Shown piece by piece: positions 24,545-41,149 of a stretch of 64,000 bases of DNA. Positions within the stretch are counted from its first letter, which is position 1; each line of letters begins with the position of its first letter. The notes under the pieces are model-generated. The model did not search any database. It was not told the DNA's origin and saw nothing but the letters and a program-made list of their open reading frames with translations. The stretch covers positions 1 to 64,000 of IMG/VR virus record IMGVR_UViG_3300005289_000016, one strand, 5' to 3'. The position numbers were made by a program, and so were the translations under genes.

Positions 24545-25411
24545 TTACAGCTTGATGTAAGTGCGGTTGAAGTCCGCTACCTGCTCGGTGAAACCAACGT
24601 TGTGTTTGGCAACATCGGCTTCCACGCCCGTCGCGAACGACGGCTTCAGGTTTGGAGAGGTACCGGTCTTCGGCATCGCGTCCAGCAGTTGCTGAGCGAA
24701 ACGGTCGACTGCGACACCTACCTGCTGCATGCCGGTCCAAGGGATCGACAGCACCAGCTCTTCACCATCAGCCGTCTTGTCACGGCGGCCAGTGAAATCA
24801 CCGGCAGTGGTTGGGTACATGTTGGTCATCAGCCATGCCGAGTTGACCTTGGTGAAGGACGGGTCCGGCTCGAAAGCAATGATGCTCATCGAGTAGATGT
24901 CCGGCAGCAAGTCGGTAGGCTTGTTGACACGGGTGGAGATCCCAGGCACCTTCGAGTCAGGGTCCATGATCAGCTCGGTGATCCAGCTCTCGAAGAAGCG
25001 CTGAACTGGACGGCCGTACTTCTCACGGATGGTCATCGATGGGTCGGAACGCTGACGCGTCACGTTGCTTGGGGTCTGTTGCATTTCGCCAGCACCCGAC
25101 ACCGGAGCTTCGACGCTGTTCACAGTCAGGGTACGGTTGAAGCCGTCCCAGGTCTGTGCGTGCATCTCAACAATGCCTTTGAGGGCCTTGTAGTAGCTGT
25201 CCGGGTTGTCCAGGTATTGGAAACCACGTGGCGCTTGCAGAACCTTGATGATCAGGTTGCGGCGCACGTAGTCGGTGTTGGCGTGGAAGTAACGGAGGTC
25301 AGACTGGTAGGCGTTCTGCCCACCAATCGCCAGGTTGACCATCGGCGAGTTGTTGAACTCGCCGTAGCCCAAGCCGTTACCGAGCAGGGTGTCGCGATGA
25401 CGGACGGTCAT
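24545..25411 (-). CDS. Tail tube protein (phiKZ gp30-like)
   Basis: 288 aa directly downstream of the sheath with a 1 nt overlap; EKYGRPVQRFFESWI and AWLMTNMYP. Confidence 0.8.
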   Translation of the reverse strand: MTVRHRDTLLGNGLGYGEFNNSPMVNLAIGGQNAYQSDLRYFHANTDYVRRNLIIKVLQAPRGFQYLDNPDSYYKALKGIVEMHAQTWDGFNRTLTVNSVEAPVSGAGEMQQTPSNVTRQRSDPSMTIREKYGRPVQRFFESWITELIMDPDSKVPGISTRVNKPTDLLPDIYSMSIIAFEPDPSFTKVNSAWLMTNMYPTTAGDFTGRRDKTADGEELVLSIPWTGMQQVGVAVDRFAQQLLDAMPKTGTSPNLKPSFATGVEADVAKHNVGFTEQVADFNRTYIKL

Positions 25412-37591: not shown

Positions 37592-37696
37592 CCATTCATC
37601 CCATTGATTCTTACCACGTCCCCCAACCGGCCGTGCGCACACCCCTTCGACTTGAGCGGTCGGTGTGGTAAGGATCTTTTTTTGCAGGAATCCCAA

Positions 37697-38113
37697 ATGG
37701 AACAAACGTTCGACCAACTGGTCCGCGAGTTCAAAGCCTTGGTTGCCTTCCAGCTGTCCGGGAAAGGTGAGACCATGAGCCCTATTGAGAAACAAGAGAT
37801 ACGGAGGCAGATTGGTAAGCTGGTGGATGCAGTCGCTACACTGGTGGTGGGTATTCCTTGCAAGGGCATGAATCGTCTCAGCATGATGGAGACTGTCGTG
37901 ATGATGTCATCTGTACGTCAAGACATCTTCGACAAGCTCGATAACGTAGGGATCAAGTACTCGCAGTATGCCAGTGAAGGTGCTATCGCTGTACAGTTGA
38001 CTGACAAAGAAAGTGGTGTCTGCATTTACCGCAGTGTCACTGATACATGGAACGATACTGAAATGCGGAACCTGATGGCTACCGTTGTCATGGAGCGCGC
38101 ATCGCTTCATTGA
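37697..38113 (+). CDS. Hypothetical protein
   Basis: AGGA RBS before MEQTFD; followed by a terminator. Confidence 0.6.
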   Translation: MEQTFDQLVREFKALVAFQLSGKGETMSPIEKQEIRRQIGKLVDAVATLVVGIPCKGMNRLSMMETVVMMSSVRQDIFDKLDNVGIKYSQYASEGAIAVQLTDKESGVCIYRSVTDTWNDTEMRNLMATVVMERASLH

Positions 38114-38116
38114 CGG

Positions 38117-38154
38117 ACATAGGAGCAGGGACTATCCCCTGCTCCTTTTCTTTT
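38117..38154 (+). terminator. Rho-independent terminator
   Basis: AGGAGCAGGG-ACTATC-CCCTGCTCCT followed by TTTCTTTT. Confidence 0.75.
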
Positions 38155-38159
38155 CTAAA

Positions 38160-38455
38160 ACGGGGGTCTGTATAGTATGCAAGGCTTGTCAACTTCTTGG
38201 GAAGGAAAGGGAAGGGGGCAAGACTAATGACGAACGGAGTGAGGAATTAGTCTGGGGGTTGGGATAGGAAGGGAATGGTCTGCCGTGTGGTGGCTGTCTG
38301 GAGGGAAGGTTACTGACCGGAGGATAGACGACACATGAGCTGTTCTAGTGAGGCGAAGCCTCACCTATACTAGAGACCGGGAAAACGTACTCACTCTATA
38401 TGTCTGATTTCGTAGTAAAAAACTTAAAACAACTAAGCTGACCTAAGGTCAGCGT
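38160..38455. other. Structured, purine-skewed non-coding element (candidate origin or ncRNA)
   Basis: No credible ORF; six G-tracts; inverted repeats AGACTAAT/ATTAGTCT, GTGAGGCGAAGCCTCAC and GCTGACCTAAGGTCAGC. Confidence 0.45.
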
Positions 38456-38475
38456 CTATGTCTGAAGGTCTGGTC

Positions 38476-39138
38476 ATGAAACTCTACCATTACTCTAAGA
38501 CGCGATTTCCTGAGTTACTGACCAAACGTCTATCGGGGGCCAGTGCAGAGGAGATCCGTAAAGCTGAGAAGCAACGTGACCGTTATGGGTTCGTCGGAGC
38601 CTATGTGGACCATCTCTCTTTCTTCTTTGACCCGATACCATCCAAGACTGTTGCTGACATCTTTAAGAACGATCATCACACATGGTACAAGGGGAGTGTC
38701 CTGTTTGAGTACGTGATTGATGTCAATCAGTTTGAAGCAGACGTTGGTTATGCGGTCACTGAAAGTCGTCGAAAGACAGCCTTCATGGATAAGTTCGTTG
38801 AGGAGCACAATTGGGTCGATGACGATCCAGTACTCTTGGCGAGATACCTGAAGGAGTTGGACGTCCTTGAAAAGCAATGGGGTGAAGTCGGACGTAGTCT
38901 TCCCGGACTCAAGGAGCAGATCGCTCTGAACGTCGGCGGTACCAAACAAGCTTACATCGATGCCTCCAAACGCCCTGATTTCGAAGAAGGTCGCCAACGG
39001 TATGCGACCAATGTGCCACATGTGATGGTCTACCCGAAATCAGGGAAAGCGCAATACACGGAACTCAATAAGCTCACTATCGGGTCAGATGCACGTCAAG
39101 CCATTGTGCGTGCTCAATCCGCTAGTTTTAAATGGTAG
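38476..39138 (+). CDS. Hypothetical protein, possible ADP-ribosyltransferase-like fold
   Basis: MKLYHYS...HLSFFFDP...LFEYVID pattern; TATG upstream; ends in FKW. Confidence 0.5.
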   Translation: MKLYHYSKTRFPELLTKRLSGASAEEIRKAEKQRDRYGFVGAYVDHLSFFFDPIPSKTVADIFKNDHHTWYKGSVLFEYVIDVNQFEADVGYAVTESRRKTAFMDKFVEEHNWVDDDPVLLARYLKELDVLEKQWGEVGRSLPGLKEQIALNVGGTKQAYIDASKRPDFEEGRQRYATNVPHVMVYPKSGKAQYTELNKLTIGSDARQAIVRAQSASFKW

Positions 39139-41067: not shown

Positions 41068-41100
41068 CATAGGGGAGGGTTCAGGCCCTCCCTTTATGCC
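41068..41100 (+). terminator. CATA...TATG hairpin terminator
   Basis: CATAGGGGAGGGTTCAGGCCCTCCCTTTATGCC. Confidence 0.6.
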
Positions 41101-41111
41101 GTCTCGAATCT

Positions 41112-41149
41112 GATTCGAATATTTTTCAACAATACATTGTAGCAGTGAG
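41112..41149 (+). promoter_or_regulatory. Putative early promoter
   Basis: GATTCGAATATTTTTCAACAATACATTGTAGCAGTGAG; the first 19 nt are identical to the copy at 19449. Confidence 0.7.

What the first reader, a model, noticed from the sequence alone, without database searches (positions are those of the whole stretch)
38160..38455. 300 bp G-rich, multi-hairpin non-coding element
Seen: one of the longest gene-free gaps in the window, strongly purine-skewed, with six GGG(GG) tracts at 38199-38273. It contains a stem AGACTAAT/ATTAGTCT around GACGAACGGAGTGAGGA, an imperfect GTGT..GTCT/AGAC..ACAC arm, a perfect GTGAGGCGAAGCCTCAC hairpin inside CTAGT/ACTAG, an outer GGTCT/AGACC pair, an A-rich tract and the hairpin GCTGACCTAAGGTCAGC. 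Established: GCGAAGC is an unusually stable DNA mini-hairpin. Inference: a replication origin or priming signal, a packaging or nucleus-anchoring site, or a structured late ncRNA starting at the TATG at 38176.
Basis: partly seen in the sequence, partly recalled or inferred. Interest (0 to 1): 0.65.

Follow-up and report, generated by a model that had tools for sequence, protein, structure and literature searches.

The report
Conserved structured RNA gene, jumbo phage
The 300-bp "gene-free" gap holds a previously undescribed, roughly 275-nucleotide folded non-coding RNA gene with its own phage-type start signal, conserved in at least 40 giant-phage genomes and better preserved than the protein genes beside it; what the RNA does is still unknown.

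Summary
The window is the first 64 kb of a 276-kb phiKZ-lineage jumbo phage. Its nearest cultured relative is Pseudomonas phage pPa_SNUABM_DT01.

The gap holds a stand-alone + strand transcription unit:
- the upstream gene's terminator (38121-38156);
- an invariant TATG (38176-38179), which matches the phiKZ late-promoter word;
- about 275 nt of RNA with seven helices;
- a 3' hairpin (38437-38453);
- a second TATG (38457-38460) for the next gene.

On an alignment not fitted to structure, 93.5% of pair cells are standard pairs, against 43-50% in slid controls. Fourteen pairs show double changes. 17% of cells are G.U, so the fold works only on the + strand. One-base indels rule out coding.

The core is 75-91% identical among relatives, where neighbouring genes are 60-83%. 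My covariance models find the RNA, syntenic and single-copy, in phages whose terminase is only about 40% identical. They do not find it in phiKZ, 201phi2-1, Noxifer, PA1C or RAY. Rfam has no match. No RNA reads were available.

Function is inferred only. The most likely role is a trans-acting RNA that binds protein. The replication-origin, packaging-site and CsrA-sponge readings get little support.

The parts
38121..38156 (+). Intrinsic terminator of the upstream gene (ORF 37604-38113): a 10-bp hairpin followed by a T/C tract.
   Evidence: The terminator scan finds it. In relatives the stem sequence differs but still pairs. A hairpin plus T run stands upstream of the RNA in every distant member.
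38171..38179 (+). Promoter word TATAGTATG. TATG lies at 38176-38179, and G38179 is the inferred +1.
   Evidence: TATG is invariant in 17 near relatives. It is also present at the start of all distant members. phiKZ late promoters are T(-3)ATG(+1) (PMC7598289). No sigma-70-type promoter lies on the + strand. The start site is inferred, not mapped.
38179..38453 (+). Body of the non-coding RNA, about 275 nt.
   Evidence: The core 38179-38375 is 75-91% identical to relatives, against 60-69% for the adjacent coding sequences. Several 1-nt indels exclude coding. There is no Rfam match.
38187..38220 (+). Hairpin P1. The 5' pyrimidine segments 38187-38190 and 38195-38198 pair with 38217-38220 and 38213-38216. 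The apical purine loop is 38199-38212 (GGGAAGGAAAGGGA).
   Evidence: 94-97% of cells are paired and many are U.G. Compensatory variants occur in distant members, for example CACCC with GGGUG. In distant members the loop shrinks to GGGA, GAGA or GGA.
38221..38253 (+). Hairpin H1. An 8-bp stem (38221-38228 with 38246-38253) is extended by GA/GA, C-G, GA/GA and AC/GU, and capped by the GGA triloop at 38236-38238.
   Evidence: 100% of cells are paired. All 8 stem pairs show double changes across 23 distinct sequences, and 5 of 11 do so on the alignment not fitted to structure. The apex is invariant in the near group.
38254..38258 (+). G run directly after H1. It has a twin G run at 38214-38218, just before H1.
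   Evidence: G runs flank the second hairpin in every family member, including the divergent L015 form. No conserved pairing partner was found for the 3' run.
38262..38284 (+). Hairpin P3. GG.UAGG (38262-38268) pairs with UCUGCC (38279-38284), leaving the loop AAGGGAAUGG.
   Evidence: 95% of cells are paired, and 4 of 6 pairs show double changes.
38285..38337 (+). Long irregular hairpin P4. The outer stem is GUGU (38285-38288) with 38333-38336; its register is ambiguous against 38331-38334. The inner stem is CUGUCU (38294-38299) with GGAUAG (38322-38327). The apex is variable and purine-rich.
   Evidence: The outer stem is 91% paired and the inner stem 75%. The apex is deleted in L029 and different in L028, L058 and L024. 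This is the least certain part of the model.
38345..38373 (+). Hairpin H3. The 7-bp core is 38348-38364, with a GAA triloop at 38355-38357. It is extended by CUAG (38345-38348) with CUAG (38370-38373).
   Evidence: 99% of cells are paired, and 3 of 7 pairs show double changes. Equivalent GC hairpins with GNA-type loops occur in distant members. Model R3 finds this domain also in L015, L016 and L026.
38400..38436 (+). A/U-rich 3' third, carrying a conserved GUA..AAAAAC word.
   Evidence: It is conserved as an A/U-rich stretch of 40-90 nt in all members. In many of them it contains a small GUAA/UUAC hairpin.
38437..38453 (+). 3' terminal GC hairpin (7 bp, loop CUA), the presumed terminator or 3' end.
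   Evidence: A hairpin stands at this place in nearly all members. It is followed by a T run in L003, L005, L004, DT01 and L029. The window copy has no T run, and the scan registers only the - strand reading.
38457..38476 (+). Second TATG (38457-38460), the promoter word of the next gene. The likely true start codon of that gene is ATG 38476.
   Evidence: The arrangement 'hairpin then (T)TATGC/T' follows the RNA in near and distant members. It also recurs elsewhere in this genome. Relative L017 keeps only the second ATG in frame.

Best explanation
The gap holds a stand-alone gene for a folded non-coding RNA of about 275 nt. It is a new RNA family of DT01-like and more distant phiKZ-lineage jumbo phages.

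**Shown**
- A conserved unit lies on the + strand. It consists of the upstream terminator, an invariant TATG, seven helices kept by compensatory change, a 3' hairpin, and then the next TATG.
- The fold works only as + strand RNA.
- The sequence is non-coding.
- It is single-copy and syntenic, lying between a head-protein gene and another core gene, downstream of the terminase gene.
- It is more conserved than its neighbours.

**Inferred**
- Transcription starts at G38179, by the phage's own non-virion RNA polymerase, in the middle-to-late phase.
- The RNA ends at the 3' hairpin.
- It acts in trans as a compact folded RNA that binds one or more proteins (phage or host), as a scaffold or decoy. 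The binding surfaces would be its GNA/GNRA-capped hairpins, its tandem G.A motifs, and its G runs and purine loops.
For: **Identity of the phage**
- The window is bases 1-64000 of a 276,032-bp viral record.
- The nearest GenBank relative is DT01. DT01 is reported to carry virion and non-virion RNAP genes (PMC8541153).
- This genome has an RNAP beta-like ORF and no sigma70_r2 match.

**Transcription-unit anatomy**
-.
- The phiKZ late-promoter word is TATG, with G as +1 and all four bases required in vitro (PMC7598289).

**Structure**
- RNAalifold predicts 31 pairs, 12 of them with double changes.
- My 42-pair model was counted on the MAFFT alignment, which is not fitted to structure. 93.5% of cells are paired, against 43-50% in slid controls. 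14 pairs have double changes, against 1-7 in the controls. 0 of 500 shuffles reach the observed value.
- All 8 stem pairs of H1 covary.

**Strand**
- 16.9% of cells are G.U. Read on the - strand, only 78.6% of cells would pair.
- Fold z-scores are -4.5 on the + strand and -2.5 on the - strand.

**Conservation**
- The core is 75-91% identical, against 60-69% for the adjacent coding sequences and 74-83% for the core head-protein gene.

**Breadth**
- Model R1/R2 finds the RNA on the same strand, downstream of the terminase gene, in loci whose terminase is only 38-53% identical.
- In three further genomes it lies just beyond the flank that was fetched.
- It occurs once per genome.
- The 3' domain model R3 recovers L015, L016 and L026.

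**Loops**
- Across the family the loops are GNA triloops or GNRA-like tetraloops, and a GA-clamped GNA hairpin recurs. This is typical of compact, protein- or tertiary-contact-forming RNAs (my knowledge).
Against: - No transcript evidence exists. The one run labelled RNA held contigs elsewhere in the 5-kb stretch, and none over the element.
- The window copy's 3' hairpin lacks a T run, so the RNA may read through into the next gene.
- TATG is a four-letter word. In this genome's upstream regions it is only about 1.5-fold commoner in the sense than in the antisense direction.
- L015 and L016 start with TATAG and have no TATG.
- The protein-binding mode of action rests on motif types only. No partner gene is consistently adjacent, because the flanking small genes vary.
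- The 5' domain is replaced in L015, L016 and L026, so hairpin H1 is not indispensable.
- The models do not find the RNA in phiKZ, 201phi2-1, Noxifer, PA1C, RAY or LucasX.
Confidence: 0.5

Rival explanations
1. It is a cis-acting leader. The RNA would be the 5' part of the downstream late transcript. It would act on its own polymerase or message, for example by processive antitermination in the manner of phage HK022 put RNA, or as a conformational switch that sets read-through of the 3' hairpin.
For: - The window's 3' hairpin has no T run.
- In the near group the 5' segment can pair either as P1 or, in an extended form, with the 5' strand of H1. The extended form has 95% of cells paired, which would allow a switch.
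- The unit sits at the head of a run of + strand genes.
Against: - The downstream genes differ between relatives, while the RNA stays the same.
- Many relatives have a full hairpin plus T-run terminator and then a fresh TATG promoter between the RNA and the next gene.
- In distant members P1 and H1 are simply adjacent, with no competing pairing.
Confidence: 0.12
2. It is a replication primer or R-loop origin. A G-rich structured transcript would form a persistent hybrid with the C-rich template, and the adjacent A/T-rich stretch would be unwound. The models are ColE1 RNA II and the T4 ori(uvsY)/ori(34) origins.
For: - The unit has a dedicated promoter.
- The 5' two-thirds are G-rich, with invariant G runs.
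- The 3' third is A/T-rich family-wide.
- The local GC skew, +0.105, is the highest in the window.
Against: - The cumulative GC skew over the 276-kb genome has no extremum near 38 kb.
- There are no iterons or repeats.
- The unit ends in a terminator-like hairpin.
- Covariation of seven helices, including ones far from the G runs, is more than a primer would need. RNA II is also structured, however, so this does not exclude the idea.
Confidence: 0.1
3. It is a sponge for the host translational repressor RsmA/CsrA. The many GGA motifs in loops and single strands would titrate the protein, as RsmY, RsmZ and CsrB do.
For: - There are 13 GGA in 200 nt, the + strand maximum of the genome.
- GGA lies in the P1 and P3 loops of the window and in the P1 loop of 7 of 9 distant members.
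- The hosts of the cultured relatives are Pseudomonas, a genus that has the Gac/Rsm system (my knowledge).
Against: - The enrichment is modest once composition is allowed for (79 of 5000 shuffles).
- Distant members have 5-9 GGA per 250 nt, about what composition predicts.
- L015 has an A-rich P1 loop without GGA.
- The GGA at the H1 apex is GAA or GUA in most relatives.
- No CsrB, RsmY or RsmZ model matches, even at E up to 10.
- Most 'GGA loops' are better read as GNRA/GNA capping loops.
Confidence: 0.08
4. It is a DNA-level site, such as a packaging (pac) site, a nucleus-anchoring site or a protein-bound cruciform near the terminase gene.
For: - It lies 2.6 kb downstream of the terminase gene, in the head module.
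- It contains many inverted repeats.
Against: - 16.9% of pair cells are G.U, and pairing drops to 78.6% on the other strand.
- The strong purine asymmetry, the promoter and the terminator are all oriented on one strand.
- The loops are conserved as RNA-type GNA/GNRA loops.
- The distance from the terminase gene varies from about 3.5 to 12 kb.
Confidence: 0.04
5. It is a G-quadruplex element. The conserved G runs flanking H1, together with those of the purine tract, would form an RNA quadruplex with H1 in a long loop, competing with the G.U-rich P1.
For: - G runs of 3-9 stand directly before and after the second hairpin in every member, including L015.
- Four or more GGG runs are present in the window and in several distant members.
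Against: - The 5' G run is accounted for by covarying pairing with the 5' pyrimidine segment.
- Some members (L060, L044) have only two runs of three or more.
- Nothing here tests folding.
Confidence: 0.05

Closest known systems
Small RNAs of phiKZ and 201phi2-1 mapped by ONT-cappable-seq (PMC11512511, PMC10914365)
   Same: - Encoded by phiKZ-lineage jumbo phages.
- Short transcription units bounded by a phage promoter and a terminator.
- Function unknown.
- One of them is conserved by position across genera.
   Different: - Those RNAs are under 250 nt and mostly derive from 5' UTRs. The conserved one sits upstream of a tail gene.
- This RNA is a stand-alone, multi-helix RNA of about 275 nt in the head/terminase module.
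- My model finds no counterpart in phiKZ or 201phi2-1.
- I did not compare sequences directly with those sRNAs.
CsrB/RsmY/RsmZ protein-sponge RNAs
   Same: - Purine-rich.
- Repeated GGA in loops.
- Independent gene ending in a terminator.
- Pseudomonas hosts.
   Different: - No model match.
- GGA density is not maintained across the family.
- The promoter is a phage TATG word, not a host GacA-dependent promoter.
- The helices are long, with GNA/GNRA caps, rather than short GGA-presenting stem-loops.
ColE1 RNA II and T4 R-loop origins
   Same: - A dedicated promoter.
- A G-rich structured transcript.
- A neighbouring A/T-rich stretch.
   Different: - No skew or other sign of an origin.
- A terminator-like 3' hairpin.
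- No antisense RNA I-like partner is evident.
phi29 packaging RNA (pRNA)
   Same: - A phage-encoded structured RNA.
- Lies in the packaging/head module.
- Inferred to be expressed late.
   Different: - No Rfam pRNA match.
- No evidence for the intermolecular loop-loop complementarity that defines pRNA rings.
- The phage lineage is unrelated.
Large structured RNAs of unknown function found in phages and prophages (GOLLD, ROOL; from my own knowledge)
   Same: - Phage-borne.
- Rich in GNRA-type loops.
- Strong covariation.
- No known function at discovery.
   Different: - Those are 500-800 nt and are in Rfam.
- This RNA is about 275 nt, has no match, and belongs to a different host and virus group.

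Membership tests
Any Rfam 15 family (4227 models) | Score at or above the family's gathering threshold | tested here: not met
   There are no matches in the whole window or in eight related loci. With E up to 10 on 38100-38480, only chance-level microRNA and terminator-like hits appear.
phiKZ-type late transcription unit | TATG word with G as the transcription start | tested here: met
   The sequence word is met. TATG at 38176-38179 is invariant in 17 near relatives and present in the distant members. The start site itself has not been mapped.
phiKZ-type late transcription unit | The genome encodes a non-virion multisubunit RNA polymerase | tested here: inconclusive
   One RNAP beta-like ORF was found at G000 71784-72092. 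The full virion and non-virion sets are reported only for the relative DT01 (PMC8541153). I did not catalogue all the subunits here.
phiKZ-type late transcription unit | Late, rifampicin-independent transcript | not testable with these tools
   No RNA run covers the element.
Independent RNA gene with an intrinsic terminator | GC hairpin followed by a U run at the 3' end | tested here: inconclusive
   The feature is met in L003, L005, L004, DT01 and L029. The window copy has the hairpin 38437-38453 but no T run.
CsrB/Rsm sponge RNAs | Many GGA motifs, above what composition predicts, kept across homologues and presented in loops | tested here: not met
   The window has 13 GGA per 200 nt, p about 0.016. 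Distant members have 5-9 per 250 nt, near expectation. L015 lacks the GGA loop. The apex GGA is not conserved.
CsrB/Rsm sponge RNAs | Binding of CsrA/RsmA | not testable with these tools
   This needs a gel shift or a pull-down.
Replication origin or primer RNA | Strand-composition switch or other origin signature at the site | tested here: not met
   The cumulative GC skew over 276 kb is weak, with its minimum near 130 kb and no turn at 38 kb. Jumbo phages may lack skew, so this is weak evidence.
Protein-coding gene (small ORF) | Reading frame kept among relatives | tested here: not met
   Five or more 1-nt indels lie within 38190-38340 between close relatives. The candidate 7-13-codon ORFs are not conserved.
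tRNA / tmRNA | ARAGORN detection | tested here: not met
   No tRNA or tmRNA gene is found in the window.
RNA G-quadruplex | Four G runs of three or more, able to form stacked tetrads | tested here: inconclusive
   The sequence requirement is met in the window, with six runs, and in several relatives but not all. Folding was not tested, and the 5' run is also explained by P1.

The most novel reading that the evidence does not exclude
The RNA is the RNA subunit of a so far unknown ribonucleoprotein of nucleus-forming jumbo phages. This particle would act late in infection, for example in head assembly or DNA packaging, or in traffic between the phage nucleus and the cytoplasm. It might involve a G-run/P1 conformational switch. 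That would make it a new functional class of phage RNA, rather than one more regulatory sRNA.
Probability: 0.12. Interest if true: 0.85.

Novelty: new variant of a known kind. Interest (0 to 1): 0.6.

Why it matters
Nucleus-forming jumbo phages are under intense study for how they organise the infected cell and evade defences. Almost all of that work concerns proteins.

This RNA is multi-helix, conserved from DT01-like phages to relatives with only about 40% identical terminase, and better preserved than the neighbouring genes. It is therefore a strong candidate for an unrecognised functional component.

It can be tested directly. pPa_SNUABM_DT01 is a cultured phage of P. aeruginosa that carries the RNA unannotated, in the gap between PA10_00117 and PA10_00118 (MW735835 119574-119973). 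Antisense-oligomer knock-down has been described for phage functional genomics (PMC12571901, seen by title and abstract only).

The alignment also gives comparative support, independent of transcript mapping, that the phiKZ TATG word marks transcript starts in a distant branch of the lineage. It further shows a recurring terminator-hairpin/TATG junction.

Tried and rejected
- **Expression evidence.** The run search found no RNA holder. The single run labelled RNA-Seq had contigs elsewhere in the 5-kb stretch, and none over 38171-38504. This leaves expression untested; it is not evidence of silence.
- **Second GGA-rich element at 46.1-46.6 kb (- strand).** This is coding sequence on the + strand.
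- **The 'gap' at 24897-25410.** It was an artefact of my crude gene caller; a 288-aa - strand ORF covers it.
- **Neighbouring proteins.** Pfam gives nothing, and PHROGs gives only families of unknown function. One of my own calls failed on bad coordinates.
- **sigma70 reading of the promoter, prompted by the PaBG paper.** Dropped, because this phage belongs to the phiKZ/Noxifer/DT01 lineage, not the PaBG group.
- **Named phages.** blastn with three distant family members against 50,697 phage records found nothing. Model R2 found nothing convincing in Noxifer, phiKZ, 201phi2-1, PA1C, RAY, LucasX or RP12. SA002 gave only E = 0.1.
- **Metagenome pattern scan.** The 14 specified bases gave mostly chance hits. 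A contig labelled human gut metagenome (L123) was left out of all later steps.
- **Catalogue of 10,006 candidate viral structured RNAs (PMC10690425).** Its supplements are not held, so I could not check whether part of this RNA is listed there.
- **Hammerhead, k-turn, sarcin-ricin or type I-F CRISPR-repeat resemblance of H1 and P4.** I considered these by eye and rejected them, because the defining unpaired or bulged positions are base-paired or not conserved here.
- **Long-range pairings.** I looked at GAGUGAG with CUCACUC, at the post-H1 G run with downstream C runs, and at the terminator tail with the purine tract. Each is present in some sequences but not conserved.

Full report
**What the window is.**
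The window is bases 1-64000 of a 276,032-bp viral record. Its only close GenBank relative is Pseudomonas phage pPa_SNUABM_DT01, at 81.6% nucleotide identity over the flank and 90% terminase identity. DT01 clusters with Noxifer and phiKZ and is reported to carry both virion and non-virion multisubunit RNA polymerases (PMC8541153). The window's genome has an RNAP beta-like ORF and no sigma70 region-2 match. The phiKZ transcription logic is therefore the right frame. The host-sigma logic of PaBG, which I looked at first, is not.

**The observation.**
These are the six G runs, the AGACTAAT/ATTAGTCT stem, the GTGT..GTCT/AGAC..ACAC arm, the perfect hairpin 38348-38364, the A-rich tract and the hairpin 38437-38453. 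As + strand RNA the gap folds better than all 100 shuffles (z = -4.5). The - strand gives z = -2.5. One proposed pair, GGTCT/AGACC, is broken without compensation in close relatives and is probably not real.

**Anatomy.**
I aligned the gap with DT01, with four IMG/VR contigs found by a pattern from the first stem-loop, and with loci fetched through the terminase. All show the same order of parts:
1. The upstream gene's intrinsic terminator (38121-38156). Its stem differs between relatives but always pairs.
2. A short spacer, then an invariant TATG (38176-38179).
3. About 200 nt of highly conserved, purine-rich sequence.
4. An A/U-rich stretch.
5. A GC hairpin (38437-38453), followed by a T run in several relatives.
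6. Directly after that, another TATG(C/T) ahead of the next gene.

In the window this second TATG is 38457-38460. Relative L017 keeps only the second ATG in frame, so the next ORF probably starts at 38476 rather than 38458. The arrangement 'hairpin then TATG' recurs elsewhere in this genome.

The phiKZ late promoter is T(-3)ATG(+1), with all four bases required in vitro (PMC7598289). I therefore infer that the RNA starts at G38179 and is made by the phage polymerase. No sigma-70-type promoter lies on the + strand.

**It is RNA, on the + strand, and non-coding.**
RNAalifold on 17 near relatives predicts hairpins P1, H1, P3 and H3, with 12 pairs showing double changes. I added the middle hairpin P4 by hand and counted the 42-pair model on the same MAFFT alignment, which is not fitted to structure:
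- 93.5% of cells are standard pairs, against 43-50% when partners are slid by 1-3 columns.
- 14 pairs have double changes, against 1-7 in the slid controls.
- No shuffle of 500 reaches the observed pairing or covariation.

H1 is the best supported helix. On a model-fitted alignment of 23 distinct sequences, all eight stem pairs covary and 100% of cells pair.

16.9% of cells are G.U, and on the opposite strand only 78.6% would pair. This is the signature of a + strand RNA, not of a duplex DNA site or cruciform.

Several one-base indels between close relatives exclude a reading frame on either strand. The tiny ORFs that can be drawn are not conserved.

**Conservation and spread.**
The core 38179-38375 is 75-91% identical to six relatives. 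The two upstream coding sequences are 60-69% identical, and the conserved head-protein gene is 74-83%.

I built a covariance model of the 5' domain (TATG, P1, H1, G run; R1). It finds the RNA on the same strand downstream of the terminase in loci whose terminase is only 38-53% identical. The rebuilt model R2 finds it in three more genomes, just beyond the flank I had fetched. It occurs once per genome.

Synteny is as follows:
- terminase (+);
- a core 'structural head protein' gene (-);
- variable small + strand genes;
- the RNA;
- more variable genes;
- a core - strand gene.

Three near-group phages (L015, L016, L026) seemed to lack the RNA. Reading the gap showed a version with a different 5' domain: an A-rich P1 loop, no H1, and the G runs kept. 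The 3' domain is the same, and the 3' domain model R3 confirms this.

In all, the RNA stands on about 40 distinct contigs. Model R2 finds nothing convincing in Noxifer, phiKZ, 201phi2-1, PA1C, RAY, LucasX, RP12 or SA002. blastn with distant members finds no named phage. DT01's record annotates nothing in its 400-bp gap. Rfam 15 has no match.

**What the family comparison says about the 'G-rich' look.**
In distant members, the purine tract is simply the 3' strand of a long P1 hairpin. Its 5' strand is pyrimidine-rich, with many G.U pairs, and its loop is GGGA, GAGA, GGAGA or GGA.

H1 is capped by GAA, GGA or GUA closed by C-G. In the window it is extended by two tandem G.A steps. The same GA-clamped GNA hairpin recurs in the middle domain of distant members, with its closing pair covarying between C-G and U-A. 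H3 carries a GNA-type loop as well.

The RNA is therefore built of stable GNA/GNRA-capped helices plus G runs flanking the second hairpin. This resembles compact folded RNAs more than a string of protein-binding GGA sites.

The window's 13 GGA per 200 nt is the + strand maximum of the genome. It is only modestly above what composition predicts. It is not maintained in distant members, and it is absent from the P1 loop of L015.

**How it most likely works.**
The following is shown: a conserved, single-copy, + strand, non-coding, structured unit with a promoter word and a terminator-like end, lying in the head/packaging gene neighbourhood.

The following is inferred: it is a stand-alone middle or late transcript of the phage polymerase that acts in trans by binding protein, as a scaffold or decoy. 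I hold the first part at about 0.85 and the mode of action at about 0.35.

The rivals are:
- a cis-acting leader or antiterminator (the window lacks a T run, and an alternative 5' pairing is possible);
- a primer or R-loop origin (G-rich RNA next to an A/T-rich stretch, but no skew signal);
- an RsmA/CsrA sponge;
- a DNA site;
- a G-quadruplex switch.

**Limits.**
- No transcript data could be had.
- The shuffle controls ignore phylogeny.
- The P4 register and apex are uncertain.
- The models cover about 85 positions each, and only fetched loci and a dozen whole phage records were searched.
- A published catalogue of viral candidate structured RNAs could not be checked.
- The read-laying run used 5001 letters. 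One metagenome locus labelled human gut (L123) was not used further.

Noticed in passing
window 41110-41136 (+), and G000 near 93567, 186222, 216967, 236424 and 270369: A repeated AT-rich motif (ATTCGAAT .. TTTTTCAACAATACAT) stands ahead of genes. It looks like the conserved early (virion RNAP) promoter class described for phiKZ-like phages.
   Followed up: partly
whole genome G000; examples at 197449, 185827 and 125582: TATAG is about 4.5-fold under-represented (85 seen, about 389 expected). Yet it sits 20-25 nt before start codons just after terminators, and before the genes downstream of the RNA in relatives. It may be a second promoter word.
   Followed up: partly
window 41074-41097; G000 119352, 165376 and 221866: A GC hairpin directly followed by (T)TATGC recurs. 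It is the same terminator/promoter junction as at 38437-38460.
   Followed up: partly
window 38458-38476: The ORF listed as 38458-39138 probably starts at ATG 38476, preceded by GAAGG. The ATG at 38458 overlaps the TATG promoter word, and only the second ATG is in frame in relative L017.
   Followed up: partly
L015 12780-13150, and also L016 and L026: These near-group phages carry a variant of the RNA. Its 3' domain is conserved, but its 5' domain is replaced: a G9 run, an A-rich loop, no H1, and TATAG without TATG.
   Followed up: partly
window 38142-38156 versus 38204-38218: The T/C tail of the upstream terminator is complementary to the purine tract over 15 bp, including G.U pairs. This is not conserved in relatives and is probably incidental.
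   Followed up: yes
G000 about 91000-91800 (outside the window): Sequences that begin like tRNA genes cluster here, seen while listing TATAG sites. ARAGORN was run only on the window, which has none.
   Followed up: no
window 38187-38198 and 38217-38225: In the near group the 5' segment (AAGUCUUGUC) can pair with the G run plus the first five bases of H1's 5' strand, with 95% of cells paired. This is an alternative to H1's base and a possible switch. It is absent in distant members.
   Followed up: partly
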